Below are positions 3,795 to 44,500 of a stretch of 64,000 bases of DNA, in pieces; the first letter of the stretch is position 1; the number at the start of each line of letters is the position of its first letter. The stretch is from Euprymna scolopes (taxonomy: Eukaryota): assembly GCA_053919585.1 (NCBI GenBank), contig CM132799.1; one strand, written 5' to 3'. Under the pieces are notes generated by a model. The model was given only the letters and a program-made list of their open reading frames with translations. It made no database searches and was not told the DNA's origin. Both the position numbers and the translations under genes were made by a program.

Positions 3795-4111
3795 GAGAGA
3801 GAAAGCGAAAGGAAAGAGAGAAGGAGAGAAACATGTGAGCATCTATACATACATCACACGTTATAAATATCCATAGATCTATACCCTAGACTTGTATAAA
3901 TATATGGAAAAATAAAAATAAGGAATGCCTGACAATAAATAAAAACATAACTAGTTTTGGATTTACCGTTTCTTTCAATATAGATGTACGTCTTCCTAGA
4001 ATCACAGTACCCTTTTATATTTACATCTACTATAATAAATTCGTCTTCCCTTTTGTTTGCTTGTTCATCATTTGAGTAATATTAAGACAAGTTACACTTT
4101 CTCACAAATTA

Positions 4112-6254: not shown

Positions 6255-6393
6255 NNNNNNNNNNNNNNNNNNNNNNNNNNNNNNNNNNNNNNNNNNNNNN
6301 NNNNNNNNNNNNNNNNNNNNNNNNNNNNNNNNNNNNNNNNNNNNNNNNNNNNNNNNNNNNNNNNNNNNNNNNNNNNNNNNNNNNNNNNNNNNN
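6255..6393. other. Assembly gap or masked run (139 N)
   Basis: Run of n. Confidence 1.
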
Positions 6394-9800: not shown

Positions 9801-10007
9801 TGTTCCGCTTGCCTGTTTCCCTCCCGACTTCAACCTGGATGCCTTCAAGTCTAACACAAACAAATTCCTGATGAACCACCCTCCCTAAGTAATGAAACCT
9901 TACCAATTCTCCAATACTATTGCTACACTATCTCGTTTGATTACTGTAAATGCAATAACTCTTATCCCTGAGTGGCCATTGGGCCTTGATAAGTGGTGAA
10001 CTCCATG

Positions 10008-13626: not shown

Positions 13627-13839
13627 NNNNNNNNNNNNNNNNNNNNNNNNNNNNNNNNNNNNNNNNNNNNNNNNNNNNNNNNNNNNNNNNNNNNNNNNNN
13701 NNNNNNNNNNNNNNNNNNNNNNNNNNNNNNNNNNNNNNNNNNNNNNNNNNNNNNNNNNNNNNNNNNNNNNNNNNNNNNNNNNNNNNNNNNNNNNNNNNNN
13801 NNNNNNNNNNNNNNNNNNNNNNNNNNNNNNNNNNNNNNN
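13627..13839. other. Assembly gap or masked run (213 N)
   Basis: Run of n. Confidence 1.
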
Positions 13840-21246: not shown

Positions 21247-24200
21247 AAAGGCGAGGAATATAGTAGACAAAGGTAACAGGCAAGAAATATAGTAGACAAA
21301 GTTAAAAGATGAGAAATATAGTAGACAAAGTTAAAAGATGAGAAATATAGTAGGCAAAGTTAAAAGATGAGAAATATAGTAGACAAAGTTAAAAGATGAG
21401 AAATATAGTAGACAAAGTTAAAAGATGAGAAATATAGTAGACAAAGTTAAAAGATAGGAAATATAGTAGGCAAAGTTAAAAGATGAGAAATATAGAAGAC
21501 AAAGTTAAAAGATGAGAAATATAGTAGACAAAGTTAAAAGAGGAGAAATATAGTAGACAAAGTTAAAAGATGAGAAATATAGTAGACAAAGTTAAAAGAT
21601 GAGAAATATAGTAGGCAAAGTTAAAAGATGAGAAATATAGTAGACAAAGTTAAAAGATGAGAAATATAGTAGACAAAGTTAAAAGATGAGAAATATAGTA
21701 GACAAAGTTAAAAGATGAGAAATATAGTAGACAAAGTTAAAAGATGAGAAATATAGTAGGCAAAGTTAAAAGATGAGAAATATAGAAGACAAAGTTAAAA
21801 GATGAGAAATATAGTAGACAAAGTTAAAAGATGAGAAATATAGTAGACAAAGTTAAAAGATGAGAAAAATAGAAGACAAAGTTAAAAGATGAGAAATATA
21901 GTAGGCAAAGTTAAATGATGAGAAATATAGTAGGCAAAGTAAAAAGGCAAGAAATATAGTAGACAAAAATAAAAGGCAAGAAATATAGTAGACAAAAATA
22001 AAAGGCAAGAAATATAGTGGCCAAATGTAACAGGCAAGAAATATAGTAGACAAAATTAAAAGATGAGAAATATAGTAGACAAAGTTAAAAGATGAGAAAT
22101 ATAGTAGACAAAGTTAAAAGATGAGAAATATAGAAGACAAAGTTAAAAGATGAGAAATATAGTAGGCAAAGTTAAAAGATGAGAAATATAGTAGACAAAG
22201 TTAAAAGATGAGAAATATAGTAGACAAAGTTAAAAGATGAGAAATATAGTAGGCAAAGTTAAAAGATGAGAAATATAGTAGACAAAGTTAAAAGATGAGA
22301 AATATAGTAGACAAAGTTAAAAGATGAGAAATATAGAAGACAAAGTTAAAAGATGAGAAATATAGTAGACAAAGTTAAAAGATGAGAAATATAGAAGACA
22401 AAGTTAAAAGATGAGAAATATAGTAGACAAAGTTAAAAGATGAGAAATATAGTAGGCAAAGTTAAATGATGAGAAATATAGTAGACAAAGTTAAAAGATG
22501 AGAAATATAGTAGGCAAAGTAAAAAGGCAAGAAATATAGTAGACAAAAATAAAAGGCAAGACATATAGTAGACAAAAATAAAAGGCAAGAAATATAGTAG
22601 ACAAAGGTAACAGGCAAGAAATATAGTAGACAAAGTTAAAAGATGAGAAATATAGTAGACAAAGTTAAAAGATGAGAAATATAGTAGACAAAGTTAAAAG
22701 ATGAGAAATATAGTAGGCAAAGTTAAAAGATGAGAAATATAGTAGACAAAGTTAAAAGATGAGAAATATAGTAGACAAAGTTAAAAGATGAGAAATATAG
22801 TAGACAAAGTTAAAAGATGAGAAATATAGTAGACAAAGTTAAAAGATGAGAAATATAGAAGACAAAGTTAAAAGATGAGAAATATAGTAGGCAAAGTTAA
22901 AAGATGAAAAATATAGTAGACAAAGTTAAAAGATGAGAAATATAGTAGACAAAGTTAAAAGATGAGAAATATAGTAGGCAAAGTTAAAAGATGAGAAATA
23001 TAGTAGACAAAGTTAAAAGATGAGAAATATAGTAGGCAAAGTTAAAAGATGAGAAATATGGAAGACAAAGTTAAAAGATGAGAAATATAGTAGACAAAGT
23101 TAAAAGATGAGAAATATAGAAGACAAAGTTAAAAGATGAGAAATATAGTAGACAAAGTTAAAAGATGAGAAATATAGTAGACAAAGTTAAAAGATGAGAA
23201 ATATAGTAGACAAAGTTAAAAGATGAGAAATATAGTAGGCAAAGTTAAAAGATGAGAAATATAGTAGACAAAGTTAAAAGATGAGAAATATAGTAGACAA
23301 AGTTAAAAGATGAGAAATATAGAAGACAAAGTTAAAAGATGAGAAATATAGTAGACAAAGTTAAAAGATGAGAAATATAGTAGACAAAGTTAAAAGATGA
23401 GAAATATAGTAGACAAAGTTAAAAGATGAGAAATATAGAAGACAAAGTTAAAAGATGAGAAATATAGTAGACAAAGTTAAAAGATGAGAAATATAGTAGT
23501 CAAAGTTAAAAGATGAGAAATATAGTAGGCAAAGTTAAATGATGAGAAATATAGTAGACAAAGTTAAAAGATGAGAAATATAGTAGGCAAAGTAAAAAGG
23601 CAAGAAATATAGTAGACAAAAATAAAAGGCAAGAAATATAGTAGACAAAAATAAAAGGCAAGAAATATAGTAGACAAAGGTAACAGGCAAGAAATATAGT
23701 AGACAAAGTTAAAAGATGAGAAATATAGTAGACAAAGTTAAAAGATGAGAAATATAGTAGACAAAGTTAAAAGATGAGAAATATAGAAGACAAAGTTAAA
23801 AGATGAGAAATATAGTAGGCAAAGTTAAAAGATGAGAAATATAGTAGACAAAGTTAAAAGATGAGAAATATAGAAGACAAAGTTAAAAGATGAGAAATAT
23901 AGAAGACAAAGTTAAAAGATGAGAAATATAGTAGACAAAGTTAAAAGATGAGAAATATAGAAGACAAAGTTAAAAGATGAGAAATATAGTAGACAAAGTT
24001 AAAAGATGAGAAATATAGAAGACAAAGTTAAAAGATGAGAAATATAGTAGACAAAGTTAAAAGATGAGAAATATAGAAGAAAAATTAAAAGATCAGAAAT
24101 ATAGTAGACAAAGGTAAAAGATGAGAAATATAGTAGACAAAGTTAAAAGATGAGAAATATAGAAGACAAAGTTAAAAGATGAGAAATATAGAAGACAAAG

Positions 24201-27200
24201 TTAAAAAATGAGAAATATAGTAGGCAAAGTTAAATGATGAGAAATATAGTAGGCAAAGTAAAAAGGCAAGAAATATAGTAGACAAAAATAAAAGGCAAGA
24301 AATATAGTAGACAAAAATAAAAGGCAAGAAATATAGTAGACAAAGGTAACAGGCAGGAAATATAGTAGACAAAGTTAAAAGATGAGAAATATAGTAGACA
24401 AAGTTAAAAGATGAGAAATATAGTAGACAAAGTTAAAAGATGAGAAATATAGAAGACAAAGTTAAAAGATGAGAAATATAGTAGGCAAAGTTAAAAGATG
24501 AGAAATATAGTAGACAAAGTTAAAAGATGAGAAATATAGTAGACAAAGTTAAAAGATGAGAAATATAGTAGACAAAGTTAAAAGATGAGAAATATAGTAG
24601 ACAAAGTTAAAAGATGAGAAATATAGTAGGCAAAGTTAAAAGATGAGAAATATAGTAGACAAAGTTAAAAGATGAGAAATATAGTAGGCAAAGTTAAAAG
24701 ATGAGAAATATAGTAGACAAAGTTAAAAGATGAGAAATATAGTAGACAAAGTTAAAAGATGAGAAATATAGAAGACAAAGTTAAAAGATGAGAAATATAG
24801 TAGACAAAGTTAAAAGATGAGAAATATAGTAGACAAAGTTAAAAGATGAGAAATATAGTAGACAAAGTTAAAAGATGAGAAATATAGTAGGCAAAGTTAA
24901 AAGATGAGAAATATAGTAGACAAAGTTAAAAGATGAGAAATATAGTAGACAAAGTTAAAAGATGAGAAATATAGAAGACAAAGTTAAAAGATGAGAAATA
25001 TAGTAGACAAAGTTAAAAGATGAGAAATATAGTAGACAAAGTTAAAAGATGAGAAATATAGTAGACAAAGTTAAAAGATGAGAAATATAGAAGACAAAGT
25101 TAAAAGATGAGAAATATAGTAGACAAAGTTAAAAGATGAGAAATATAGTAGTCAAAGTTAAAAGATGAGAAATATAGTAGGCAAAGTTAAATGATGAGAA
25201 ATATAGTAGACAAAGTTAAAAGATGAGAAATATAGTAGGCAAAGTAAAAAGGCAAGAAATATAGTAGACAAAAATAAAAGGCAAGAAATATAGTAGACAA
25301 AAATAAAAGGCAAGAAATATAGTAGACAAAGGTAACAGGCAAGAAATATAGTAGACAAAGTTAAAAGATGAGAAATATAGTAGACAAAGTTAAAAGATGA
25401 GAAATATAGTAGACAAAGTTAAAAGATGAGAAATATAGAAGACAAAGTTAAAAGATGAGAAATATAGTAGGCAAAGTTAAAAGATGAGAAATATAGTAGA
25501 CAAAGTTAAAAGATGAGAAATATAGAAGACAAAGTTAAAAGATGAGAAATATAGAAGACAAAGTTAAAAGATGAGAAATATAGTAGACAAAGTTAAAAGA
25601 TGAGAAATATAGAAGACAAAGTTAAAAGATGAGAAATATAGTAGACAAAGTTAAAAGATGAGAAATATAGAAGACAAAGTTAAAAGATGAGAAATATAGT
25701 AGACAAAGTTAAAAGATGAGAAATATAGAAGAAAAATTAAAAGATCAGAAATATAGTAGACAAAGGTAAAAGATGAGAAATATAGTAGACAAAGTTAAAA
25801 GATGAGAAATATAGAAGACAAAGTTAAAAGATGAGAAATATAGAAGACAAAGTTAAAAAATGAGAAATATAGTAGGCAAAGTTAAATGATGAGAAATATA
25901 GTAGGCAAAGTAAAAAGGCAAGAAATATAGTAGACAAAAATAAAAGGCAAGAAATATAGTAGACAAAAATAAAAGGCAAGAAATATAGTAGACAAAGGTA
26001 ACAGGCAGGAAATATAGTAGACAAAGTTAAAAGATGAGAAATATAGTAGACAAAGTTAAAAGATGAGAAATATAGTAGACAAAGTTAAAAGATGAGAAAT
26101 ATAGAAGACAAAGTTAAAAGATGAGAAATATAGTAGGCAAAGTTAAAAGATGAGAAATATAGTAGACAAAGTTAAAAGATGAGAAATATAGTAGACAAAG
26201 TTAAAAGATGAGAAATATAGTAGACAAAGTTAAAAGATGAGAAATATAGTAGACAAAGTTAAAAGATGAGAAATATAGTAGGCAAAGTTAAAAGATGAGA
26301 AATATAGTAGACAAAGTTAAAAGATGAGAAATATAGTAGGCAAAGTTAAAAGATGAGAAATATAGTAGACAAAGTTAAAAGATGAGAAATATAGTAGACA
26401 AAGTTAAAAGATGAGAAATATAGAAGACAAAGTTAAAAGATGAGAAATATAGTAGACAAAGTTAAAAGATGAGAAATATAGTAGACAAAGTTAAAAGATG
26501 AGAAATATAGTAGACAAAGTAAAAAGATGAGAAATATAGAAGACAAAGTTAAAAGATGAGAAATATAGTAGGCAAAGTTAAATGATGAGAAATATAGTAG
26601 GCAAAGTTAAAAGATGAGAAAAATAGTAGACAAAAATAAAAGGCAAGAAATATAGTAGACAAAAATAAAAGGCAAGAAATATAGTAGACAAAGGTAACAG
26701 GCAAGAAATATAGTAGACCAAGTTAAAAGATGAAAAATATAGTAGACAAAGTTAAAAGATGAGAAATATAGTAGACAAAGTTAAAAGATGAGAAATATAG
26801 TAGGCAAAGTTAAAAGATGAGAAATATAGCAGACAAAGTTAAAAGATGAGAAATATAGTAGACAAAGTTAAAAGATGAGAAATATAGAAGACAAAGTTAA
26901 AAGATGAGAAATATAGTAGACAAAGTTAAAAGATGAGAAATATAGAAGACAAAATTAAAAGATGAGAAATATAGTAGACAATGGTAAAAGATGAGAATTA
27001 TAGTAGACAAAGTTAAAAGATGAGAAATATAGAAGACAAAGTTAAAAGATGAGAAATATAGAAGACAAAGTAAAAAGATGAGAAATATAGTAGGCAAAGT
27101 TAAATGATGAGAAATATAGTAGGCAAAGTAAAAAGGCAAGAAATATAGTAGACAAAAATAAAAGGCAAGAAATATAGTAGACAAAAATAAAAGGCAAGAA

Positions 27201-30200
27201 ATATAGTAGACAAAAATAAAAGGCAAGAAATATAGTAGACAAAGGTAACAGGCAAGAAATATAGTAGGCAAAGTTAAAAGATGAGAAATATAGTAGACAA
27301 AGTTAAAAGATGAGAAATATAGTAGACAAAGTTAAAAGATGAGAAATATAGTAGACAAAGTTAAAAGATGAGAAATATAGTAGGCAAAGTTAAAAGATGA
27401 GAAATATAGTAGACAAAGTTAAAAGATGAGAAATATAGTAGACAATGTTAAAAGATGAGAAATATAGAAGACAAAGTTAAAAGATGAGAAATATAGTAGA
27501 CAAAGTTAAAAGATGAGAAATATAGAAGACAAAGTTAAAAGATGAGAAATATAGTAGACAAAGTTAAAAGATGAGAAATATTGTAGGCAAAGTTAAATGA
27601 TGAGAAATATAGTAGACAAAGTTAAAAGATGAGAAATATAGTAGGCAAAGTAAAAAGGCAAGAAATATAGTAGACAAAAATAAAAGGCAAGACATATAGT
27701 AGACAAAAATAAAAGGCAAGAAATATAGTAGACAAAGGTAACAGGCCAGAAATATAGTAGACAAAGTTAAAAGATGAGAAATATAGTAGACAAAGTTAAA
27801 AGATGAGAAATATAGTAGACAAAGTTAAAAGATGAGAAATATAGTAGGCAAAGTTAAAAGATGAGAAATATAGTAGACAAAGTTAAAAGATGAGAAATAT
27901 AGTAGACAAAGTTAAAAGATGAGAAATATAGACGACAAAGTTAAAAGATGAGAAATATAGTAGACAAAGTTAAAAGATGAGAAATATAGAAGACAAAGTT
28001 AAAAGATGAGAAATATAGAAGACAAAGTTAAAAGATGAGAAATATAGTAGACAAAGTTAAAAGTTGAGAAATATAGAAGACAAAGTTAAAAGATGAGAAA
28101 TATAGTAGGCAAAGTTAAAAGATGACAAATATAGTAGACAAAGTTAAAAGATGAGAAATATAGAAGACAAAGTTAAAAGATGAGAATATAGTAGGCAAAG
28201 TTAAAAGATGAGAAATATAGTAGACAAAGTTAAAAGATGAGAAATATAGTAGGCAAAGTTAAAAGATGAGAAATATAGAAGACAAAGTTAAAAGATGAGA
28301 AATATAGTAGACAAAGTTAAAAGATGAGAAATATAGAAGACAAAGTTAAAAGATGAGAAATATAGTAGACAAAGTTAAAAGATGAGAAATATAGTAGACA
28401 AAGTTAAAAGATGAGAAATATAGTAGACAAAGTTAAAAGATGAGAAATATAGTAGGCAAAGTTAAAAGATGAGAAATATAGTAGACAAAGTTAAAAGATG
28501 AGAAATATAGTAGACAAAGTTAAAAGATGAGAAATATAGTAGACAAAGTAAAAAGATGAGAAATATAGTAGACAAAGTTAAAAGATGATAAATATAGAAG
28601 ACAAAGTTAAAAGATGAGAAATATAGTAGACAAAGTTAAAAGATGAGAAATATAGTAGTCAAAGTTAAAAGATGAGAAATATAGTAGGCAAAGTTAAATG
28701 ATGAGAAATATAGTAGACAATGTTAAAAGATGAGAAATATAGTAGGCAAAGTAAAAAGGCAAGAAATATAGTAGACAAAAATAAAAGGCAAGAAATATAG
28801 TAGACAAAAATAAAAGGCAAGAAATATAGTAGACAAAGGAAACAGGCAAGAAATATAGTAGACAAAGTTAAAAGATGAGAAATATAGTAGACAAAGTTAA
28901 AAGATGAGAAATATAGTAGACAAAGTTAAAAGATGAGAAATATAGAAGACAAAGTTAAAAGATGAGAAATATAGTAGGCAAAGTTAAAAGATGAGAAATA
29001 TAGTAGACAAAGTTAAAAGATGAGAAATATAGAAGACACAGTTAAAAGATGAGAAATATAGAAGACAAAGTTAAAAGATGAGAAATATAGTAGCCAAAGT
29101 TAAAAGATGAGAAATATAGAAGACAAAGTTAAAAGATGAGAAATATAGTAGACAAAGTTAAAAGATGAGAAATATAGAAGACAAAGTTAAAAGATGAGAA
29201 ATATAGTAGACAAAGTAAAAAGATGAGAAATATAGAAGACAAAATTAAAAGATGAGAAATATAGTAGACAAAGTTAAAAGATGAGAAATATAGTAGACAA
29301 AGTTAAAAGATGAGAAATATAGAAGACAAAGTTAAAAGATGAGAAATATAGAAGTCAAAGTAAAAAGATGAGAAATATAGTAGGCAAAGTTAAATGATGA
29401 GAAATATAGTAGGCAAAGTAAAAAGGCAAGAAATATAGTAGACAAAAATAAAAGGCAAGAAATATAGTAGACAAAAATAAAAGGCAAGAAATATAGTAGA
29501 CAAAGGTAACAGGCAAGAAATATAGTAGACAAAGTTAAAAGATGAGAAATATAGTAGACAAAGTATAAAGATGAGAAATATAGTAGACAAAGTTAAAAGA
29601 TGAGAAATATAGAAGACAAAGTCAAAAGATGAGAAATATAGTAGGCAAAGTTAAAAGATGAGATATATAGTAGACAAAGTTAAAAGATGAGAAATATAGT
29701 AGACAAAGTTAAAAGATGAGAAATATAGAAGACAAAGTTAAAAGATGAGAAATATAGTAGACAAAGTTAAAAGATGAGAAATATAGTAGACAAAGTTAAA
29801 AGATGAGAAATATAGTAGACAAAGTTAAAAGATGAGAAATATAGAAGACAAAGTTAAAAGATGAGAAATATAGTAAACAAAGTTAAATGATGAGAAATAT
29901 AGTAGGCAAAGTTAAAAGATGAGAAATATAGTAGACAAAAATAAAAGGCAAGAAATATAGTAGACAAAAATAAAAGGCAAGAAATATAGTAGACAAAGGT
30001 AACAGGCAAGAAATATAGTAGACCAAGTTAAAAGATAAAAAATATAGTAGACAAAGTTAAAAGATGAGAAATATAGTAGACAAAGTTAAAAGATGAGAAA
30101 TATAGTAGGCAAAGTTAAAAGATGAGAAATATAGCAGACAAAGTTAAAAGATGAGAAATATAGTAGACAAAGTTAAAAGATGAGAAATATAGAAGACAAA

Positions 30201-33200
30201 GTTAAAAGATGAGAAATATAGTAGACAAAGTTAAAAGATGAGAAATATAGAAGACAAAATTAAAAGATGAGAAATATAGTAGACAAAGGTAAAAGATGAG
30301 AAATATAGTAGACAAAGTTAAAAGATGAGAAATATAGAAGACAAAGTAAAAAGATGAGAAATATAGAAGACAAAGTAAAAAGATGAGAAATATAGTAGGC
30401 AAAGTTAAATGATGAGAAATATAGTAGGCAAAGTAAAAAGGCAAGAAATATAGTAGACAAAAATAAAAGGCAAGAAATATAGTAGACAAAAATAAAAGGC
30501 AAGAAATATAGTAGACAAAAATAAAAGGCAAGAAATATAGTAGACAAAGGTAACAGGCAAGAAATATAGTAGGCAAAGTTAAAAGATGAGAAATATAGTA
30601 GACAAAGTTAAAAGATGAGAAATATAGTAGACAAAGTTAAAAGATGAGAAATATAGAAGACAAAGTTAAAAGATGAGAAATATAGTAGGCAAAGTTAAAA
30701 GATGAGAAATATAGTAGACAAAGTTAAAAGATGAGAAATATAGTAGACAAAGTTAAAAGATGAGAAATATAGAAGACAAAGTTAAAAGATGAGAAATATA
30801 GTAGACAAAGTCAAAAGATGAGAAATATAGTAGACAAAGTTAAAAGATGAGAAATATAGTAGACAAAGTTAAAAGATGAGAAATATAATAGACAAAGTTA
30901 AAAGATGAGAAATATAGTAGGCAAAGTTAACTGATGAGAAATATAGTAGGCAAAGTAAAAAGGCAAGAAATATAGTAGACAAAAATAAAAGGCAAGAAAT
31001 ATAGTAGACAAAAATAAAAGGCAAGAAATATAGTAGACAAAGGTAACAGGCAAGAAATATAGTAGACAAAGTTAAAAGTTGAGAAATATAGAAGACAAAG
31101 TTAAAAGATGAGAAATATAGTAGGCAAAGTTAAAAGATGACAAATATAGTAGACAAAGTTAAAAGATGAGAAATATAGAAGACAAAGTTAAAAGATGAGA
31201 ATATAGTAGGCAAAGTTAAAAGATGAGAAATATAGTAGACAAAGTTAAAAGATGAGAAATATAGTAGGCAAAGTTAAAAGATGAGAAATATAGAAGACAA
31301 AGTTAAAAGATGAGAAATATAGTAGACAAAGTTAAAAGATGAGAAATATAGAAGACAAAGTTAAAAGATGAGAAATATAGTAGACAAAGTTAAAAGATGA
31401 GAAATATAGTAGACAAAGTTAAAAGATGAGAAATATAGTAGACAAAGTTAAAAGATGAGAAATATAGTAGGCAAAGTTAAAAGATGAGAAATATAGTAGA
31501 CAAAGTTAAAAGATGAGAAATATAGTAGACAAAGTTAAAAGATGAGAAATATAGTAGACAAAGTAAAAAGATGAGAAATATAGTAGACAAAGTTAAAAGA
31601 TGATAAATATAGAAGACAAAGTTAAAAGATGAGAAATATAGTAGACAAAGTTAAAAGATGAGAAATATAGTAGTCAAAGTTAAAAGATGAGAAATATAGT
31701 AGGCAAAGTTAAATGATGAGAAATATAGTAGACAAAGTTAAAAGATGAGAAATATAGTAGGCAAAGTAAAAAGGCAAGAAATATAGTAGACAAAAATAAA
31801 AGGCAAGAAATATAGTAGACAAAAATAAAAGGCAAGAAATATAGTAGACAAAGGTAACAGGCAAGAAATATAGTAGACAAAGTTAAAAGATGAGAAATAT
31901 AGTAGACAAAGTTAAAAGATGAGAAATATAGTAGACAAAGTTAAAAGATGAGAAATATAGAAGACAAAGTTAAAAGATGAGAAATATAGTAGGCAAAGTT
32001 AAAAGATGAGAAATATAGTAGACAAAGTTAAAAGATGAGAAATATAGAAGACACAGTTAAAAGATGAGAAATATAGAAGACAAAGTTAAAAGATGAGAAA
32101 TATAGTAGCCAAAGTTAAAAGATGAGAAATATAGAAGACAAAGTTAAAAGATGAGAAATATAGTAGACAAAGTTAAAAGATGAGAAATATAGAAGACAAA
32201 GTTAAAAGATGAGAAATATAGTAGACAAAGTAAAAAGATGAGAAATATAGAAGACAAAATTAAAAGATGAGAAATATAGTAGACAAAGTTAAAAGATGAG
32301 AAATATAGTAGACAAAGTTAAAAGATGAGAAATATAGAAGACAAAGTTAAAAGATGAGAAATATAGAAGACAAAGTAAAAAGATGAGAAATATAGTAGGC
32401 AAAGTTAAAAGATGAGAAATATAGTAGGCAAAGTAAAAAGGCAAGAAATATAGTAGACAAAAATAAAAGGCAAGAAATATAGTAGACAAAAATAAAAGGC
32501 AAGAAATATAGTAGACAAAGGTAACAGGCAAGAAATATAGTAGACAAAGTTAAAAGATGAGAAATATAGTAGACAAAGTTAAAAGATGAGAAATATAGTA
32601 GACAAAGTTAAAAGATGAGAAATATAGAAGACAAAGTCAAAAGATGAGAAATATAGTAGGCAAAGTTAAAAGATGAGAAATATAGTAGACAAAGTTAAAA
32701 GATGAGAAATATAGTAGACAAAGTTAAAAGATGAGAAATATAGAAGACAAAGTTAAAAGATGAGAAATATAGTAGACAAAGTTAAAAGATGAGAAATATA
32801 GTAGACAAAGTTAAAAGATGAGAAATATAGTAGACAAAGTTAAAAGATGAGAAATATAGAAGACAAAGTTAAAAGATGAGAAATATAGAAGACAAAGTTA
32901 AAAGATGAGAAATATAGTAGACAAAGTTAAAAGATGAGAAATATAGTAGACAAAAATAAAAGGCAAGAAATATAGTAGACAAAACAAAAAGGCAAGAAAT
33001 ATAGTAGACAAAGGTAACAGGCAAGAAATATAGTAGACCAAGTTAAAAGATGAAAAATATAGTAGACAAAGTTAAAAGATGAGAAATATAGTAGACAAAG
33101 TTAAAAGATGAGAAATATAGTAGGCAAAGTTAAAAGATGAGAAATATAGCAGACAAAGTTAAAAGATGAGAAATATAGTAGACAAAGTTAAAAGATGAGA

Positions 33201-36200
33201 AATATAGAAGACAAAGTTAAAAGATGAGAAATATAGTAGACAAAGTTAAAAGATGAGAAATATAGAAGACAAAATTAAAAGATGAGAAATATAGTAGACA
33301 AAGGTAAAAGATGAGAAATATAGTAGACAAAGTTAAAAGATGAGAAATATAGAAGACAAAGTTAAAAGATGAGAAATATAGAAGACAAAGTAAAAAGATG
33401 AGAAATATAGTAGGCAAAGTTAAATGATGAGAAATATAGTAGGCAAAGTAAAAAGGCAAGAAATATAGTAGACAAAAAAAAAGGCAAGAAATATAGTAGA
33501 CAAAAATAAAAGGCAAGAAATATAGTAGACAAAAATAAAAGGCAAGAAATATAGTAGACAAAGGTAACAGGCAAGAAATATAGTAGGCAAAGTTAAAAGA
33601 TGAGAAATATAGTAGACAAAGTTAAAAGATGAGAAATATATTAGACAAAGTTAAAAGATGAGAAATATAGAAGACAAAGTTAAAAGATGAGAAATATAGT
33701 AGGCAAAGTTAAAAGATGAGAAATATAGTAGACAAAGTTAAAAGATGAGAAATATAGTAGACAACGTTAAAAGATGAGAAATATAGAAGACAAAGTTAAA
33801 AGATGAGAAATATAGTAGACAAAGTTAAAAGATGAGAAATATAGTAGACAAAGTTAAAAGATGAGAAATATAGTAGACAAAGTTAAAAGATGAGAAATAT
33901 AATAGACAAAGTTAAAAGATGAGAAATATAGTAGGCAAAGTTAAATGATGAGAAATATAGTAGGCAAAGTAAAAAGGCAAGAAATATAGTAGACAAAAAT
34001 AAAAGGCAAGAAATATAGTAGACAAAAATAAAAGGCAAGAAATATAGTAGACAAAGGTAACAGGCAAGAAATATAGTAGACAAAGTTAAAAGATGAGAAA
34101 TATAGTAGACAAAGTTAAAAGATGAGAAATATAGTAGGCAAAGTTAAAAGATGAGAAATATAGAAGACAAAGTTAAAAGATGAGAAATATAGAAGACAAA
34201 GTTAAAAGATGAGAAATATAGTAGGCAAAGTTAAAAGATGAGAAATATAGAAGACAAAGTTAAAAGATGAGAAATATAGTAGACAAAATTAAAAGATGAG
34301 AAATATAGTAGACAAAGTTAAAAGATGAGAAATATAGTAGACAAAGTTAAAAGATGAGAAATATAGTAGGCAAAGTTAAAAGATGAGAAATATAGAAGAC
34401 AAAGTTAAAAGATGAGAAATATAGAAGACAAAGTTAAAAGATGAGAAATATAGTAGGCAAAGTTAAAAGATGAGAAATATAGAAGACAAAGTTAAAAGAT
34501 GAGAAATATAGTAGACAAAGTTAAAAGATGAGAAATATAGTAGGCAAAGTTAAAAGATGAGAAATATAGTAGGCAAAGTTAAAAGATGAGAAATATAGAA
34601 GACAAAGTTAAAAGATGAGAAATATAGTAGACAAAGTTAAAAGATGAGAAATATAGTAGACAAAGTTAAAAGATGAGAAATATAGAAGACAATGTTAAAA
34701 GATGAGAAATATAGTAGGCAAAGTTAAATGATGAGAAATATAGTAGGCAAAGTAAAAAGGCAAGAAATATAGTAGACAAAAATAAAAGGCAAGAAATATA
34801 GTAGACAAAAATAAATAGCAAGAAATATAGTAGACGAAGGTAACAGGCAAGAAATATAGTAGACCAAGTTAAAAGATGAGAAATATAGTAGACAAAGTTA
34901 AAAGATGAGAAATATAGTAGACAAAGTTAAAAGATGAGAAATATAGAAGACAAAGTTAAAAGATGAGAAATATAGTAGGCAAAGTTAAAAGATGAGAAAT
35001 ATAGTAGGCAAAGTTAAAAGATGAGAAATATAGTAGACAAAGTTAAAAGATGAGTAATATAGTAGAATAAGTTAAAAGATGAGAAATATAGTAGGCAAAG
35101 TTAAAAGATGAGAAATATAGTAGACAAAGTTAAAAGATGAGAAATATAGTAGGCAAAGTTAAAAGATGAGAAATATAGTAGGCAAAGTTAAAAGATGAGA
35201 AATATAGTAGACAAAGTTAAAAGATGAGAAATATAGTAGGCAAAGTTAAAAGATGAGAAATATAGTAGACAAAGTTAAAAGATGAGAAATATAGTAGGCA
35301 AAGTTAAATGATGAGAAATATAGTAGGCAAAGTTAAATGATGAGAAATATAGTAGACAAAGTTAAAAGATGATAAATATAGTAGACAAAGTTAAAAGATG
35401 AGAAATATAGTAGACAAAGTTAAAAGATGAGAAATATAATAGACAAAGTTAAAAGATGAGAAATATAGTAGGCAAAGTTAAATGATGAGAAATATAGTAG
35501 GCAAAGTAAAAAGGCAAGAAATATAGTAGACAAAAATAAAAGGCAAGAAATATAGTAGACAAAAATAAAAGGCAAGAAATATAGTAGACAAAGGTAACAG
35601 GCAAGAAATATAGTAGACAAAGTTAAAAGATGAGAAATATAGTAGACAAAGTTAAAAGATGAGAAATATAGTAGGCAAAGTTAAAAGATGAGAAATATAG
35701 AAGACAAAGTTAAAAGATGAGAAATATAGTAGACAAAGTTAAAAGATGAGAAATATAGTAGGCAAAGTTAAAAGATGAGAAATATAGAAGACAAAGTTAA
35801 AAGATGAGAAATATAGTAGACAAAGTTAAAAGATGAGAAATATAGTAGACAAAGTTAAAAGATGAGAAATATAGTAGACAAAGTTAAAAGATGAGAAATA
35901 TAGTAGGCAAAGTTAAAAGATGAGAAATATAGAAGACAAAGTTAAAAGATGAGAAATATAGAAGACAAAGTTAAAAGATGAGAAATATAGTAGGCAAAGT
36001 TAAAAGATGAGAAATATAGAAGACAAAGTTAAAAGATGAGAAATATAGTAGACAAAGTTAAAAGATGAGAAATATAGTAGGCAAAGTTAAAAGATGAGAA
36101 ATATAGTAGGCAAAGTTAAAATATGAGAAATATAGAAGACAAAGTTAAAAGATGAGAAATATAGTAGACAAAGTTAAAAGATGAGAAATATAGTAGACAA

Positions 36201-39200
36201 AGTTAAAAGATGAGAAATATAGAAGACAATGTTAAAAGATGAGAAATATAGTAGGCAAAGTTAAATGATGAGAAATATAGTAGGCAAAGTAAAAAGGCAA
36301 GAAATATAGTAGACAAAAATAAAAGGCAAGAAATATAGTAGACAAAAATAAAAGGCAAGAAATATAGTAGACAAAGGTAACAGGCAAGAAATATAGTAGA
36401 CCAAGTTAAAAGATGAGAAATATAGTAGACAAAGTTAAAAGATGAGAAATATAGTAGACACAGTTAAAAGATGAGAAATATAGTAGACAAAGTTAAAAGA
36501 TGAGAAATATAGTAGGCAAAGTTAAATGATGAGAAATATAGTAGACAAAGTTAAAAGATGAGAAATATAGTAGGCAAAGTTAAAAGATGAGAAATATAGT
36601 AGACAAAGTTAAAAGATGAGAAACATAGTAGACAAAGTTAAAAGATGAGAAATATAGAAGACAAAGTTAAAAGATGAGAAATATAGTAGGCAAAGTTAAA
36701 AGATGAGAAATATAGTAGACAAAGTTAAAGGATGAGAAATATAGAAGACAACGTTAAAAGATGAGAAATATAGTAGGCAAAGTTAAAAGATGAGAAATAT
36801 AGTAGAAAAAGTTAAAAGATGAGAAATATAGAAGACAAAGTTAAAAGATGAGAAATATAGTAGGCAAAGTTAAAAGATGAGAAATATAGAAGACAACGTT
36901 AAAAGATGAGAAATATAGTAGGCAAATGTAAAAGATGAGAAATATAGTAGACAAAGTTAAAATATGAGAAATATAGTAGGCAAAGTTAAAAGATGAGAAA
37001 TATAGTAGACAAAGTTAAAAGATGAGAAATATAGTAGACAAAGTTAAAAGATGAGAAATATAGTAGGCAAAGTTAAAAGATGAGAAATATAGAAGACAAA
37101 GTTAAAAGATGAGAAATATAGTAGGCAAAGTTAAATGATGAGAAATATAGTAGACAAAGTTAAAAGATGAGAAATATAGTAGGCAAAGTTAAAAGATGAG
37201 AAATATAGTAGACAAAGTTAAAAGATGAGAAATATAGTAGACAAAGTTAAAAGATGAGAAATATAGTAGGCAAAGTTAAAAGATTAGAAATATAGTAGAC
37301 AAAGTTAAAAGATGAGAAATATAGTAGACAAAGTTAAAAGATGAGAAATATAGTAGACAAAGTTAAAAGATGAGAAATATAGTAGACAAAGTTAAAAGAT
37401 GAGAAATATAGTAGACAAAGTTAAAAGATGAGAAATATAGTAGACAAAGTTAAAAGATGAGAAATATAGTAGACAAAGTTAAAAGATGAGAAATATAGAA
37501 GACAAAGTTAAAAGATGAGTAATATAGTAGGCAAAGTAAAAAGATGAGAAATATAGAAGACAAAGTTAAAAGATGAGAAATATAGTAGGCAAAGTTAAAA
37601 GATGAGAAATATAGTAGACAAAGTTAAAAGATGAGAAATATAGTAGGCAAAGTTAAAAGATGAGAAATATAGTAGACAAAGTTAAAAGATGAGAAATATA
37701 GTAGACAAAGTTAAAAGATGAGAAATATAGTAGACAAAGTTAAAAGATGAGAAATATAGTAGGAAAAGTTAAAAGATGAGAAATATAGTAGACAAAGTTA
37801 AAAGATGAGAAATATAGTAGACAAAGTTAAAAGATGAGAAATATAGTAGACAAAGTTAAAAGATGAGAAATATAGTAGACAAAGTTAAAAGATGAGAAAT
37901 ATAGTAGACAAAGTTAAAAGATGAGAAATATAGTAGACAAAGTTAAAAGATGAGCAATATAGTAGACAAAGTTAAAAGATGAGAAATATAGAAGACAAAG
38001 TTAAAAGATGAGAAATATAGAAGACAAAGTTAAAAGATGAGAAATATAGTAGGCAAAGTTAAAAGATGAGAAATATAGTAGACAACGTTAAAAGATGAGA
38101 AATATAGTAGACAAAGTTAAAAGATGAGAAATATAGTAGGCAAAGTTAAATGAGCAGAAATATAGTAGAAAAAGTTAAAAGATGAGAAATATAGTAGGCA
38201 AAGTTAAAAGATGAGAAATATAGTAGACAAAGTTAAAAGATGAGAAATATAGTAGACAAAGTTAAAAGATGAGAAATATAGAAGACAAAGTTAAAAGATG
38301 AGAAATATAGTAGGCAAAGTTAAAAGATGAGAAATATAGTAGACAAAGTTAAAAGATGAGAAATATAGAAGACAACGTTAAAAGATGAGAAATATAGTAG
38401 GCAAAGTTAAAAGATGAGAAATATAGTAGACAACGTTAAAAGATGAGAAATATAGTAGACAAAGTTAAAAGATGACAAATATAGAAGACAAAGTTAAAAG
38501 ATGACAAATATAGTAGACAAAGTTAAAAGATGAGAAATATAGAAGACAACGTTAAAAGATGAGAAATATAGTAGACAAAGTTAAAAGATGAGAAATATAG
38601 TAGACAAAGTTAAAAGATGAGAAATATAGAAGACAAAGTTAAAAGATGAGAAATATAGTAGGCAAAGTTAAAAGATTAGAAATATAGAAGACAAAGTTAA
38701 AAGATGAGAAATATAGTAGGCAAAGTTAAAAGATGAGAAATATAGTAGACAAAGTTAAAAGATGAGAACTATAGTAGGCAAAGTTAAAAGATGAGAAATA
38801 AAGTAGACAAAGTTAAAAGATGAGAAATATAGTAGACAAAGTTAAAAGATGAGAAATATAGTAGGTGAAGTTAAAAGATGAGAAATATAGAAGACAAAGT
38901 TAAAAGATGAGAAATATAGTAGGCAAAGTTAAATGATGAGAAATATAGTAGACAAAGTTAAAAGATGAGAAATATAGTAGGCAAAGTTAAAAGATGAGAA
39001 ATATAGTAGACAAAGTTAAAAGATGAGAAATATAGTAGGCAAAGTTAAAAGATGAGAAATATAGAAGACGAAGTTAAAAGATGAGAAATATAGTAGGCAA
39101 AGTTAAAAGATGAGAAATATAGTAGACAAAGTTAAAAGATGAGAAATATAGTAGACAACGTTAAAAGATGAGAAATATAGTAGACAAAGTTAATAGATGA

Positions 39201-41550
39201 GAAATATAGTAGGCAAAGTTAAATGATGAGAAATATAGTAGACAAAGTTAAAAGATGAGAAATATAGTAGACAAAGTTAAAAGATGAGAAATATAGAAGA
39301 CAACGTTAAAAGATGAGAAATATAGTAGGCAAAGTTAAAAGATGAGAAATATAGAAGACAAAGTTAAATGATGAGAAATATAGTAGACAAAGTTAAAAGA
39401 TGAGAAATATAGTAGGCAAAGTTAAAAGATGAGAAATATAGTAGACAAAGTTAAAAGATGAGAAATATAGTAGACAAAGTTAAAAGATGAGAAATATAGT
39501 AGACAAAGTTAAAAGATGAGAAATATAGTAGACAAAGTTAAAAGATGAGAAATATAGTAGACAAAGTTAAAAGATGAGAAATATAGAAGACAAAGTTAAA
39601 AGATTAGACATATAGAAGACAAAGTTAAAAGATGAGAAATATAGTAGGCGAAGTTAAAAGATGAGAAATATAGTAGACAAAGTTAAAAGATGAGAAATAT
39701 AGTAGACAACGTTAAAAGATGAGAAATATAGTAGACAAAGTTAAAAGATGAGAAATATAGTAGGCAAAGTTAAATGATGAGAAATATAGTAGACAAAGTT
39801 AAAAGATGAGAAATATAGTAGGCAAAGTTAAAAGATGAGAAATATAGTAGACAAAGTTAAAAGATTAGAAATATAGTAGACAAAGTTAAAAGATGAGAAA
39901 TATAGAAGACAAAGTTAAAAGATGAGAAATATAGTAGGCAAAGTTAAAAGATGAGAAATATAGTAGACAAAGTTAAAGATGAGAAATATAGAAGACAACG
40001 TTAAAAGATGAGAAATATAGTAGGCAAAGTTAAAAGATGAGAAATATAGTAGACAAAGTTAAAAGATGACAAATATAGTAGACAAAGTTAAAAGATGAGA
40101 AATATAGAAGACAAAGTTAAAAGATGAGAAATATAGTAGGCAAAGTTAAAAGATGAGAAATATAGTAGGCAAAGTTAAAAGATGAGAAATATAGTAGACA
40201 AAGTTAAAAGATGAGTAATATAGTAGAATAAGTTAAAAGATGAGAAATATAGTAGGCAAAGTTAAAAGATGAGAAATATAGTAGACAAAGTTAAAAGATG
40301 AGAAATATAGTAGGCAAAGTTAAAAGATGAGAAATATAGTAGGCAAAGTTAAAAGATGAGAAATATAGTAGACAAAGTTAAAAGATGAGAAATATAGTAG
40401 GCAAAGTTAAAAGATGAGAAATATAGTAGACAAAGTTAAAAGATGAGAAATATAGTAGGCAAAGTTAAATGATGAGAAATATAGTAGGCAAAGTTAAATG
40501 ATGAGAAATATAGTAGACAAAGTTAAAAGATGATAAATATAGTAGACAAAGTTAAAAGATGAGAAATATAGTAGACAAAGTTAAAAGATGAGAAATATAA
40601 TAGACAAAGTTAAAAGATGAGAAATATAGTAGGCAAAGTTAAATGATGAGAAATATAGTAGGCAAAGTAAAAAGGCAAGAAATATAGTAGACAAAAATAA
40701 AAGGCAAGAAATATAGTAGACAAAAATAAAAGGCAAGAAATATAGTAGACAAAGGTAACAGGCAAGAAATATAGTAGACAAAGTTAAAAGATGAGAAATA
40801 TAGTAGACAAAGTTAAAAGATGAGAAATATAGTAGGCAAAGTTAAAAGATGAGAAATATAGAAGACAAAGTTAAAAGATGAGAAATATAGAAGACAAAGT
40901 TAAAAGATGAGAAATATAGTAGGCAAAGTTAAAAGATGAGAAATATAGAAGACAAAGTTAAAAGATGAGAAATATAGTAGACAAAGTTAAAAGATGAGAA
41001 ATATAGTAGACAAAGTTAAAAGATGAGAAATATAGTAGACAAAGTTAAAAGATGAGAAATATAGTAGGCAAAGTTAAAAGATGAGAAATATAGAAGACAA
41101 AGTTAAAAGATGAGAAATATAGAAGACAAAGTTAAAAGATGAGAAATATAGTAGGCAAAGTTAAAAGATGAGAAATATAGAAGACAAAGTTAAAAGATGA
41201 GAAATATAGTAGACAAAGTTAAAAGATGAGAAATATAGTAGGCAAAGTTAAAAGATGAGAAATATAGTAGGCAAAGTTAAAATATGAGAAATATAGAAGA
41301 CAAAGTTAAAAGATGAGAAATATAGTAGACAAAGTTAAAAGATGAGAAATATAGTAGACAAAGTTAAAAGATGAGAAATATAGAAGACAATGTTAAAAGA
41401 TGAGAAATATAGTAGGCAAAGTTAAATGATGAGAAATATAGTAGGCAAAGTAAAAAGGCAAGAAATATAGTAGACAAAAATAAAAGGCAAGAAATATAGT
41501 AGACAAAAATAAAAGGCAAGAAATATAGTAGACAAAGGTAACAGGCAAGA
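21247..41550. repeat. Proximal satellite domain carrying ~25 copies of an ordered divergent-monomer cassette (higher-order structure)
   Basis: The variable segments occur in the order GTTAAATGATG > (GTTAAAAGATG) > GTAAAAAGGCA > AATAAAAGGCA x2-3 > GGTAACAGGCA. The last monomer of the cassette is seen at ~21272, 22026, 22606, 23679, 24345, 25331, 25997, 26693, 27244, 27737, 28838, 29505, 29998, 30549, 31042, 31853, 32520, 33013, 33563, 34056, 34839, 35593, 36376, 40754 and 41537, and never afterwards. Confidence 0.93.
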
Positions 41551-44500
41551 AATATAGTAGACCAAGTTAAAAGATGAGAAATATAGTAGACAAAGTTAAA
41601 AGATGAGAAATATAGTAGACACAGTTAAAAGATGAAAAATATAGTAGACAAAGTTAAAAGATGAGAAATATAGTAGGCAAAGTTAAATGATGAGAAATAT
41701 AGTAGACAAAGTTAAAAGATGAGAAATATAGTAGGCAAAGTTAAAAGATGAGAAATATAGTAGACAAAGTTAAAAGATGAGAAACATAGTAGACAAAGTT
41801 AAAAGATGAGAAATATAGAAGACAAAGTTAAAAGATGAGAAATATAGTAGGCAAAGTTAAAAGATGAGAAATATAGTAGACAAAGTTAAAGGATGAGAAA
41901 TATAGAAGACAACGTTAAAAGATGAGAAATATAGTAGGCAAAGTTAAAAGATGAGAAATATAGTAGAAAAAGTTAAAAGATGAGAAATATAGAAGACAAA
42001 GTTAAAAGATGAGAAATATAGTAGGCAAAGTTAAAAGATGAGAAATATAGAAGACAAAGTTAAAAGATAAGAAATATAGTAGGCAAATGTAAAAGATGAG
42101 AAATATAGTAGACAAAGTTAAAATATGAGAAATATAGTAGGCAAAGTTAAAAGATGAGAAATATAGTAGACAAAGTTAAAAGATGAGAAATATAGTAGAC
42201 AAAGTTAAAAGATGAGAAATATAGTAGGCAAAGTTAAAAGATGAGAAATATAGAAGACAAAGTTAAAAGATGAGAAATATAGTAGGCAAAGTTAAATGAT
42301 GAGAAATATAGTAGACAAAGTTAAAAGATGAGAAATATAGTAGGCAAAGTTAAAAGATGAGAAATATAGTAGACAAAGTTAAAAGATGAGAAATATAGTA
42401 GACAAAGTTAAAAGATGAGAAATATAGTAGGCAAAGTTAAAAGATTAGAAATATAGTAGACAAAGTTAAAAGATGAGAAATATAGTAGACAAAGTTAAAA
42501 GATGAGAAATATAGTAGACAAAGTTAAAAGATGAGAAATATAGTAGACAAAGTTAAAAGATGAGAAATATAGTAGACAAAGTTAAAAGATGAGAAATATA
42601 GTAGACAAAGTTAAAAGATGAGAAATATAGTAGACAAAGTTAAAAGATGAGAAATATAGAAGACAAAGTTAAAAGATGAGTAATATAGTAGGCAAAGTAA
42701 AAAGATGAGAAATATAGAAGACAAAGTTAAAAGATGAGAAATATAGTAGGCAAAGTTAAAAGATGAGAAATATAGTAGACAAAGTTAAAAGATGAGAAAT
42801 ATAGTAGGCAAAGTTAAAAGATGAGAAATATAGTAGACAAAGTTAAAAGATGAGAAATATAGTAGACAAAGTTAAAAGATGAGAAATATAGTAGACAAAG
42901 TTAAAAGATGAGAAATATAGTAGACAAAGTTAAAAGATGAGAAATATAGTAGACAAAGTTAAAAGATGAGAAATATAGTAGACAAAGTTAAAAGATGAGA
43001 AATATAGTAGACAAAGTTAAAAGATGAGAAATATAGTAGACAAAGTTAAAAGATGAGAAATATAGTAGACAAAGTTAAAAGATGAGAAATATAGTAGACA
43101 AAGTTAAAAGATGAGCAATATAGTAGACAAAGTTAAAAGATGAGAAATATAGAAGACAAAGTTAAAAGATGAGAAATATAGAAGACAAAGTTAAAAGATG
43201 AGAAATATAGTAGGCAAAGTTAAAAGATGAGAAATATAGTAGACAACGTTAAAAGATGAGAAATATAGTAGACAAAGTTAAAAGATGAGAAATATAGTAG
43301 GCAAAGTTAAATGAGCAGAAATATAGTAGAAAAAGTTAAAAGATGAGAAATATAGTAGGCAAAGTTAAAAGATGAGAAATATAGTAGAAAAAGTTAAAAG
43401 ATGAGAAATATAGTAGACAAAGTTAAAAGATGAGAAATATAGAAGACAAAGTTAAAAGATGAGAAATATAGTAGGCAAAGTTAAAAGATGAGAAATATAG
43501 TAGACAAAGTTAAAAGATGAGAAATATAGAAGACAACGTTAAAAGATGAGAAATATAGTAGGCAAAGTTAAAAGATGAGAAATATAGTAGACAAAGTTAA
43601 AAGATGACAAATATAGTAGACAAAGTTTAAAGATGACAAATATAGAAGACAAAGTTAAAAGATGACAAATATAGTAGACAAAGTTAAAAGATGAGAAATA
43701 TAGAAGACAACGTTAAAAGATGAGAAATATAGTAGGCAAAGTTAAAAGATGAGAAATATAGTAGACAAAGTTAAAAGATGAGAAATATAGAAGACAAAGT
43801 TAAAAGATGAGAAATATAGTAGGCAAAGTTAAAAGATTAGAAATATAGAAGACAAAGTTAAAAGATGAGAAATATAGTAGGCAAAGTTAAAAGATGAGAA
43901 ATATAGTAGACAAAGTTAAAAGATGAGAACTATAGTAGGCAAAGTTAAAAGATGAGAAATAAAGTAGACAAAGTTAAAAGATGAGAAATATAGTAGACAA
44001 AGTTAAAAGATGAGAAATATAGTAGGTGAAGTTAAAAGATGAGAAATATAGAAGACAAAGTTAAAAGATGAGAAATATAGTAGGCAAAGTTAAATGATGA
44101 GAAATATAGTAGACAAAGTTAAAAGATGAGAAATATAGTAGGCAAAGTTAAAAGATGAGAAATATAGTAGACAAAGTTAAAAGATGAGAAATATAGTAGA
44201 CAAAGTTAAAAGATGAGAAATATAGTAGGCAAAGTTAAAAGATGAGAAATATAGTAGACAAAGTTAAAAGATGAGAAATATAGTAGACAAAGTTAAAAGA
44301 TGAGAAATATAGTAGACAAAGTTAAAAGATGAGAAATATAGTAGGCAAAGTTAAAAGATGAGAAATATAGAAGACGAAGTTAAAAGATGAGAAATATAGT
44401 AGGCAAAGTTAAAAGATGAGAAATATAGTAGACAAAGTTAAAAGATGAGAAATATAGTAGACAACGTTAAAAGATGAGAAATATAGTAGACAAAGTTAAT

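What the first reader, a model, noticed from the sequence alone, without database searches (positions are those of the whole stretch)
21247..41550. Constant-core/variable-segment design with a fixed-order cassette of divergent monomers punctuating the array
Monomers share an ~18-bp core (AGAAATATAGTAGACAAA), while the other 11 bp switch between discrete classes. The rare classes (GTAAAAAGGCA, AATAAAAGGCA, GGTAACAGGCA) are never scattered. They appear as one ordered block about 25 times, separated by a variable number of ordinary monomers (spacing ~490-1100 bp, once ~4.4 kb). A subset of blocks (e.g. ~26640, 29940, 32955) lacks the GTAAAAAGGCA monomer. Length stays at 29 bp despite 4-5 substitutions in 11 positions. 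Inference: the cassette is a relic of an older HOR whose major monomer expanded between cassettes, or a periodic protein-binding landmark analogous to CENP-B boxes.
Basis: partly seen in the sequence, partly recalled or inferred. Interest (0 to 1): 0.75.

Follow-up and report, generated by a model that had tools for sequence, protein, structure and literature searches.

The report
Nested repeat blocks at a satellite's edge
The ordered four-monomer "cassette" is real, but it is best read as a passive marker copied along with large blocks of a 29-base satellite DNA array as its edge grew by repeated tandem duplication, an ordinary way for such arrays to evolve rather than a built-in protein landmark.

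Summary
Observation confirmed and sharpened. A 29-bp satellite runs unbroken from 21254 to the window end (1473 monomers). Monomers with a GGCA-type tail occur only in 21254-41547. They form 25 runs (97 monomers), always in the order 1-2-2-3. Spacing is 493-1101 bp, once 4378 bp. None occur in the inner 22.4 kb.

The "constant core / variable segment" design holds only between classes. Among the 94% ordinary monomers, the "core" (positions 11, 14, 18) varies more than the 11-bp "variable" tail.

The cassette closes a repeat unit of 17-38 monomers (once 151). These units are themselves copied in larger blocks:
- a two-unit pair;
- a five-unit super-repeat of 104-121 monomers, present about three times;
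- a 178-monomer duplication.

Block copies are 99.4-99.9% identical.

Cassette monomers are not significantly better conserved than ordinary ones. Spacing has no fixed period, and there is no CENP-B box. Short-read contigs from two independent studies contain the cassette junctions. The long-range order could not be checked against long reads.

Verdict: an ordinary nested higher-order repeat at an array edge, in a satellite family not found in the searched literature. Unchecked notes of this scan describe similar nested designs in other satellites of this genome.

The parts
21254..64000 (+). Uninterrupted 29-bp satellite array of 1473 monomers. The + strand is purine-rich (A 55%, G 21%, T 20%, C 4%). 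The array runs off the window end.
21247..21282 (+). Array start. The 7-bp stretch AAAGGCG resembles a GGCA-type monomer tail and is followed by one class-3 monomer, so the array begins inside a cassette.
21254..41547 (+). Cassette-bearing edge domain: 24 full units of 17-38 monomers (one of 151), each ending in (G)(a)-1-2-2-3.
23574..23689 (+). Representative canonical cassette of 116 bp, monomers 1-2-2-3. Its junction words were found in contigs of three public runs.
22617..26007 (+). Two-unit block present twice (22617-24355 and 24356-26007). The core duplication 22936-24848 vs 24588-26500 is 99.9% identical, with 65 of 66 monomers identical.
25342..34066 (+). Five-unit super-repeat present about three times: 25342-28848, 28849-31863, and 31864-34066 (this last copy lacks the fifth unit). 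It carries the '223' cassettes at 26617, 29922 and 32937 and the '12223' cassettes at 27110, 30415 and 33430 at corresponding places.
34937..44186 (+). Duplication at a lag of 178 monomers (5.16 kb): 34937-39025 vs 40098-44186, 99.7% identical. It copied the cassettes at 35488 and 36271 to 40649 and 41432. It also copied inner-type sequence, which explains the 4.4-kb cassette-free gap.
41548..64000 (+). Cassette-free inner domain of 773 monomers, with its own long-period duplications at lags of 150, 159 and 309 monomers. For example, 44941-49319 vs 49291-53669 is 99.8% identical.

Best explanation
This is non-coding satellite DNA. The outer ~20 kb of a 29-bp array of at least 42.7 kb is a nested higher-order repeat. 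One ancestral unit consisted of a run of ordinary monomers closed by a short run of diverged, GGCA-tailed monomers in the order 1-2-2-3.

That unit was multiplied by tandem duplication of ever larger blocks, through unequal exchange or replication-based duplication. The levels are single units, then a two-unit pair, then a five-unit super-repeat, then a 5-kb block. The cassette hitch-hikes in each copy. This explains three things: it is never scattered, it always keeps its order, and its rare variants recur at about 3-kb intervals.

The variable spacing comes from gains and losses of ordinary monomers inside units. The interior of the array is a different, cassette-free repeat domain of the same satellite, homogenised by its own duplications of about 150 monomers.

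Shown: the anatomy, the block copies and the inheritance of variants. Inferred: the recombination mechanism and the absence of function.
For: - All 25 cassette runs lie in 21254-41547, and all keep the order 1*2*3*.
- The 24 units fall into 15 sequence clusters. Their order along the array repeats as 9-(10/4)-7-(6/5)-(2/14), about three times, as (1/3)-9 twice, and as 11-(13/15).
- Long diagonals of identical monomers: 65 of 66, 88 of 104 and 133 of 141 in the edge, and 143 of 151 in the interior. Base identity is 99.36-99.90%. Any two ordinary monomers are only about 95.7% alike.
- The cassette variants '223' and '12223' each occur three times at 3305 and 3015 bp spacing, so each is one event copied with the super-repeat.
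- One-base deletions (28-bp monomers) recur as the pairs 24067/25719 and 28154/31169 at exactly these lags.
- No sign of constraint. Rare substitutions are 0.47% per bp in the cassette against 0.69% in edge ordinary monomers (p = 0.07) and 0.45% in the interior.
- Rare substitutions per position: core 6.9, tail 8.7 (p = 0.08).
- A toy neutral model of random block duplication and deletion keeps the order 1*2*3* in 96-99% of runs. With blocks of up to 60-120 monomers it leaves the intact cassette in 0-83% and 0-96% of runs (5th-95th percentile); 75% is observed.
- Weaker homogenisation at array ends, leaving divergent variants there, is established knowledge (review PMC5615363, section 3.4.3.1).
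Against: - Monomers 1 and 2a are strikingly uniform: 21 of 21 and 23 of 24 copies identical. Flanking offsets differ by 1.5-9.5%. Much of that difference reflects whole-monomer register shifts and mixing of common variants, not point mutation.
- In the toy model with only small blocks (up to 30 monomers), the observed 75% intact cassettes lies above the 95th percentile of 48%. Neutrality therefore depends on duplications being mostly large. Large blocks are what is seen, but the model is crude.
- The large-scale order rests on one assembly. No long reads could be laid.
Confidence: 0.8

Rival explanations
1. The cassette is a functional landmark. It would be a sequence-specific protein-binding or boundary element kept by selection, marking the array edge or phasing chromatin, in the manner of CENP-B boxes.
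For: Strict order and high uniformity of cassette monomers, with monomer 1 identical in 21 of 21 copies. Class-defining differences are concentrated in an 11-bp tail (p = 0.027). The intact fraction of 75% is above the small-block neutral expectation.
Against: - There is no constant period: 17 to 38 monomers, once 151.
- The cassette is absent from the inner 22.4 kb.
- Its rare-substitution rate does not differ significantly from ordinary monomers.
- The variants '223' and '12223' were tolerated and copied.
- No CENP-B box core motif occurs anywhere in the window.
- Only one CpG lies inside cassettes, so there is no substrate for a CpG-methylation contrast.
- The uniformity is fully explained by recent block copying.
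Confidence: 0.05
2. Polarity reversed. The GGCA-type cassette is not an old relic but a young variant that arose in the edge zone and is being amplified there. The ordinary monomer would be the ancestral form.
For: Cassette copies are almost undiverged. Cassette-bearing blocks are as young as the interior ones, 99.4-99.9% against 99.6-99.8%. Monomer 1 shares its TAGGC core with a common ordinary type, and a hybrid tail GTAAAAAGATG exists in 16 copies.
Against: The outermost monomer of the array is class 3, preceded by a GGCA-like tail. Edge ordinary monomers carry more rare substitutions than interior ones, 17.2% against 11.2% of monomers (p = 0.0015), as expected for an older, less homogenised layer.
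Confidence: 0.2
3. The long-range pattern is partly an assembly artefact. Near-identical blocks of 2-5 kb would have been mis-joined, collapsed or over-expanded, so the number and spacing of cassettes would not be the true ones.
For: Blocks are 99.4-99.9% identical over 1.9-4.4 kb, which is hard to assemble. No long-read run was offered. Reads could only be laid on 319 bp.
Against: Cassette junctions a-1-2, 2-3 and 3-a are present in contigs of X1 and X2 (study P1) and X5 (study P2), with 0-2 differences. Cassette words are about 1/60 as deep as ordinary words. That is compatible with the window's own ratio of about 24 copies of a cassette word among 1473 monomers. Paralogous blocks differ by consistent private variants, which would anchor an assembler.
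Confidence: 0.1

Closest known systems
Higher-order repeat (HOR) organisation of satellite DNA, as in primate alpha satellite, especially 'cascade' HORs in which a monomer type recurs within one unit (PMC5615363; PMC11276891)
   Same: Distinct monomer types stand in fixed order and are amplified together. Unit copies (99.4-99.9% identical) are far more alike than neighbouring monomers (about 94-96%). Repeat levels are nested.
   Different: The monomer is 29 bp, not about 171 bp. Unit length is not fixed (17-38 monomers, once 151). Most of the unit consists of one monomer class with minor variants. A centromeric location is unknown.
Edge heterogeneity and 'layered expansion' of satellite arrays: divergent variants persist at array ends while the centre is homogenised (PMC5615363 section 3.4.3.1; model named in PMC10910784 and PMC11276891)
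   Same: Diverged monomer classes are confined to the outer 20 kb and reach the very first monomer. The interior is a cassette-free domain. Edge ordinary monomers carry 1.5-fold more rare substitutions.
   Different: The edge domain is itself recently and actively duplicating, not decayed. Only one edge is visible, so symmetry of layers cannot be judged.
CENP-B box in alpha satellite and mouse minor satellite (PMC5615363 section 3.4.3.4)
   Same: A short sequence feature present in a subset of monomers of a satellite.
   Different: There is no match to the box motif. Spacing is not regular. The cassette is absent from half of the visible array. No extra conservation was found. No protein partner is known.

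Membership tests
Satellite DNA with higher-order repeat organisation | Long head-to-tail array of monomers of one length | tested here: met
   1465 of 1473 monomers are 29 bp. One array runs from 21253 to 64000.
Satellite DNA with higher-order repeat organisation | Distinct monomer types recur in a fixed order as a multi-monomer unit | tested here: met
   24 units end in (G)(a)-1-2-2-3. There are 18 exact 1223 strings against at most 1 in 20000 shuffles.
Satellite DNA with higher-order repeat organisation | Copies of the unit are more alike than monomers within a unit | tested here: met
   Blocks are 99.36-99.90% identical. Ordinary monomers differ pairwise by 4.3%. Identity at a lag of 29 bp is 93.6-94.6%.
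Satellite DNA with higher-order repeat organisation | Constant unit length (regular HOR period) | tested here: not met
   Units are 17, 19, 20, 23, 24, 26, 27, 28, 34, 37, 38 and 151 monomers long. The regular period exists only at the level of the block copies.
Willard-type HOR (each monomer type once per unit) | One monomer of each type per canonical unit | tested here: not met
   Monomer 2 occurs twice, and ordinary types occur many times per unit. This fits the 'cascade' description of PMC11276891.
CENP-B-box-like binding landmark | Match to the CENP-B box core (TTCG N4 A N2 CGGG) | tested here: not met
   0 matches with up to 1 mismatch on both strands of the window.
CENP-B-box-like binding landmark | Regular recurrence throughout the array | tested here: not met
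   Spacing is 493-1101 bp, once 4378 bp. There are none in 41548-64000.
CENP-B-box-like binding landmark | Conservation above that of neighbouring satellite sequence | tested here: inconclusive
   Rare substitutions are 0.47% against 0.69% per bp, Fisher p = 0.07. The copies are not independent.
CENP-B-box-like binding landmark | Bound by a sequence-specific protein; centromeric location | not testable with these tools
   No chromatin, binding or cytogenetic data were available.
Layered-expansion array | Older, more diverged layers outside and a younger homogeneous core inside | tested here: inconclusive
   Monomers with a rare substitution: edge ordinary 17.2%, interior 11.2% (p = 0.0015). 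Block identities are similar in both zones.
Layered-expansion array | Matching layers on both sides of the core | not testable with these tools
   The array runs off the window at 64000.

The most novel reading that the evidence does not exclude
The TTAA-free, GGCA-tailed cassette is a selected edge element of this satellite. It would be a sequence-specific binding or boundary site that marks and stabilises the transition between the array and the flanking unique DNA, kept in order because its monomers act together.
Probability: 0.04. Interest if true: 0.6.

Novelty: new member of a known kind. Interest (0 to 1): 0.2.

Why it matters
It is a clean, fully readable example of how a short-monomer satellite grows at its edge. 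At least three nested levels of tandem block duplication can be read from marker monomers and inherited private variants. A sharp switch to a different repeat domain follows inside the array.

The satellite family itself was not found in the searchable literature. The principle (higher-order repeats, weaker homogenisation at array ends) is well established, so the case has mainly illustrative and annotation value. The cassette also gives a practical marker for checking the assembly and for sizing the edge domain.

Tried and rejected
- Seed in the flank. Local alignment of ordinary and cassette monomers against 1-21246 gave scores at shuffle level. The best was 32 against a shuffled maximum of 28, at 4011-4064 on the minus strand, which is marginal. 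The 13-mer core has no match upstream of 21259.
- Base-level autocorrelation was blurred by the six 28-bp monomers. I replaced it with monomer-level diagonals.
- Coding. Read directly from the consensus, the + strand has stops in all three frames. Because 29 is not a multiple of 3, every frame rotates through them. I did not pursue this further.
Only 319 bp around one cassette could be laid, so long-range order was not tested. The polyA RNA run X18 gave 0 reads, which is no evidence either way.
- Metagenome contig scan for an ordinary dimer junction: 0 hits.
- Full-text paper searches for four 16-17-mers of the monomer, both strands: 0 papers.
- Scan-notes look-up by sequence: nothing.
- I re-ran it in two parts.
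- The N stretches at 6255-6393 and 13627-13839 were left untouched.
Full report
**What is there**

Tandem Repeats Finder reports a single 29-bp array from 21253 to the window end, with 1474 copies and 94% matches. Anchoring on the 18-bp core gives 1473 monomers. Of these, 1465 are exactly 29 bp, six are 28 bp and one is a 57-bp unit. No foreign insertion interrupts the array. The + strand is A 55%, G 21%, T 20% and C 4%, with only 77 CpG in 42.7 kb. The left flank (1-21246) is AT-rich unique or dispersed-repeat DNA. It holds many (AT)n tracts, a reverse-transcriptase ORF at 8644-9888 (RVT_1, E = 1.7e-28) and a 201/244-bp tandem repeat at 18071-19020. Unchecked notes of earlier agents call the genome a 5.9-Gb mollusc. 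The sequencing runs that hold the stretch carry a coded species label, or 'mollusc metagenome' and 'invertebrate metagenome'.

**Check of the observation**

They form 25 runs totalling 97 monomers, all between 21254 and 41547. Start-to-start distances are 493-1101 bp, once 4378 bp. The order 1-2-2-3 cannot be chance: 18 exact 1223 strings against a mean of 0.0045 and a maximum of 1 in 20000 shuffles. The three blocks without monomer 1 are at 26617, 29922 and 32937.

- Three cassettes have an extra monomer 2, at 27110, 30415 and 33430.
- The first monomer of the whole array is class 3, preceded by a GGCA-like tail, so the array starts inside a cassette.
- A GTTAAATGATG monomer sits one or two places before almost every cassette.
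- The array goes on, cassette-free, for another 773 monomers to the window end.

**The 'constant core / variable segment' claim**

This holds only between classes. The exact core is present in 701 of 1465 monomers. The commonest polymorphisms of the array lie in the core: position 11 T/A at 18%, position 14 A/G at 27%, and position 18 A/C at 5%. Among ordinary monomers, mean entropy is 0.156 in the core and 0.092 in the tail. Rare substitutions per position are 6.9 in the core and 8.7 in the tail (p = 0.08). Class-defining positions are enriched in the tail: 8 of 11 against 5 of 18 (p = 0.027). However, three of those positions (GATG to GGCA) are shared by all three cassette classes and so count as one ancestry.

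**What it is**

Cutting the array after each cassette gives 24 units of 17-38 monomers, one of 151. All have the same context before and after the cassette. Clustering the units by sequence gives 15 types. Their order along the array is 12, 8, 1, 9, 3, 9, 10, 7, 6, 2, 9, 4, 7, 5, 14, 9, 4, 7, 5, 11, 13, 11, 15, 11.

This order resolves into three patterns:
- a two-unit block present twice (22617-24355 and 24356-26007);
- a five-unit super-repeat present about three times (25342-28848, 28849-31863, 31864-34066);
- an 11-x alternation.

Monomer-level diagonals show the same structure without any prior cutting.

| Block pair | Identical monomers | Base identity |
|---|---|---|
| 22936-24848 vs 24588-26500 | 65 of 66 | 99.90% |
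| 28038-31052 vs 31053-34066 | 88 of 104 | 99.36% |
| 34937-39025 vs 40098-44186 | 133 of 141 | 99.73% |
| 44941-49319 vs 49291-53669 (interior) | 143 of 151 | 99.79% |

Two ordinary monomers taken at random differ by 4.3%. The '223' and '12223' cassette variants sit at corresponding places of the super-repeat, 3305 and 3015 bp apart, so each is a single event that was then copied. In '223' the place of monomer 1 is taken by an ordinary monomer with the same TAGGC core, which indicates a tail conversion rather than a deletion. One-base deletions recur as the pairs 24067/25719 and 28154/31169 at the same lags. The 4.4-kb 'gap' is a piece of interior-type sequence. The last two cassettes (40649, 41432) are copies of those at 35488 and 36271, made by the 5.16-kb duplication.

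**Is there any sign of function?**

- Spacing has no constant period.
- The cassette is absent from the inner 22.4 kb.
- Rare substitutions are 0.47% per bp in cassette monomers, 0.69% in edge ordinary monomers (Fisher p = 0.07) and 0.45% in interior monomers.
- At least nine length-changing events are needed for the ordinary parts of the units (about 20 monomers each). One copy-number change and one conversion are needed in the four cassette monomers. The per-monomer rates are therefore similar (my count).
- No CENP-B box core motif occurs in the window.
- Only one CpG lies inside cassettes.

A toy neutral model of random tandem block duplication and deletion keeps the order 1*2*3* in 96-99% of runs. 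The fraction of fully intact cassettes depends on block size. Its mean is 0.13, 0.31 and 0.54 for maximum blocks of 30, 60 and 120 monomers. The observed 0.75 lies inside the 5th-95th percentile range for 60 and 120 but above it for 30. With the large blocks actually seen (57-178 monomers), neutrality is sufficient. The model is crude, and this is the one place where a small doubt remains.

**Independent data**

On 319 bp around the cassette at 23574, contigs cover the junctions a-1-2, 2-3 and 3-a with 0-2 differences. The contigs come from X1 and X2 (study P1) and X5 (study P2). Cassette words are about 1/60 as deep as ordinary words in X1 and X2. That fits the window's own proportions and argues that cassettes are not commoner elsewhere. 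The cassette is thus not an error of this assembly, but the long-range order remains untested. A polyA RNA run gave no reads. Three RNA-labelled runs hold 5-8% of the sampled words, which could not be followed up. The very high satellite depth in X1 and X2, about 2% of all letters, against X5 is unexplained (notebook).

**Comparison with what is known**

The structure meets the defining features of a higher-order repeat, except for a constant unit length. It is of the 'cascade' kind, in which monomer types recur within a unit (PMC11276891). Divergent variants surviving at array ends while the centre is homogenised is textbook behaviour of satellites (PMC5615363). The same idea underlies the 'layered expansion' model of centromeric arrays (PMC10910784). 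Here the edge position, the class-3 first monomer and a 1.5-fold excess of rare substitutions in the edge zone (p = 0.0015) fit an older outer layer. The edge blocks are as young as the interior ones, however, so 'relic' is not demonstrated.

No paper in the searched library prints the monomer sequence, and no metagenome contig holds it. Unchecked first-reader notes of this scan describe similar nested higher-order designs in other satellites of this genome.

**Verdict**

The design is an ordinary consequence of nested tandem duplication at the edge of a satellite array. The functional reading has no support. It is a new member of a known kind, of low to moderate interest.

Noticed in passing
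window:21254-64000: Every ordinary monomer holds a TTAA (MseI) site. The 116-145-bp cassettes hold none, so cassettes are TTAA-free islands that could be counted by restriction digest.
   Followed up: partly
window:23487-23805 in runs X1, X2 and X5: Ordinary monomer words reach a summed depth of 1-3x10^5 in two small runs of unknown library type, about 2% of their letters. In a larger run labelled 'DNA?' they reach only 10^2-7x10^2. This points to an enrichment, transcription or filtering effect that I could not resolve.
   Followed up: no
window:4011-4064 (-): A lone stretch weakly resembles a GGCA-type monomer with its neighbour's core. Its local score is 32 against a shuffled maximum of 28. 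This is marginal and not a demonstrated seed.
   Followed up: partly
window:8644-9888 (+): A 414-aa ORF with a reverse-transcriptase domain (RVT_1, E = 1.7e-28). It is a retroelement remnant in the left flank.
   Followed up: partly
window:18071-19020: Two adjacent tandem repeats of 201 and 244 bp, two copies each at 80-82% identity, about 2.2 kb before the satellite. Another first-reader note covers this stretch.
   Followed up: no
window:3437-20815: There are many long (AT)n/(TA)n microsatellites, 13 tracts of up to 43 repeats, in the 21 kb left of the array.
   Followed up: no
window:41548-64000: The cassette-free interior has its own long-period code of core variants (T/A at position 11, A/G at 14, A/C at 18, and GTTAAATGATG monomers). 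Duplications occur at lags of 150, 159, 210, 309 and 360 monomers.
   Followed up: partly
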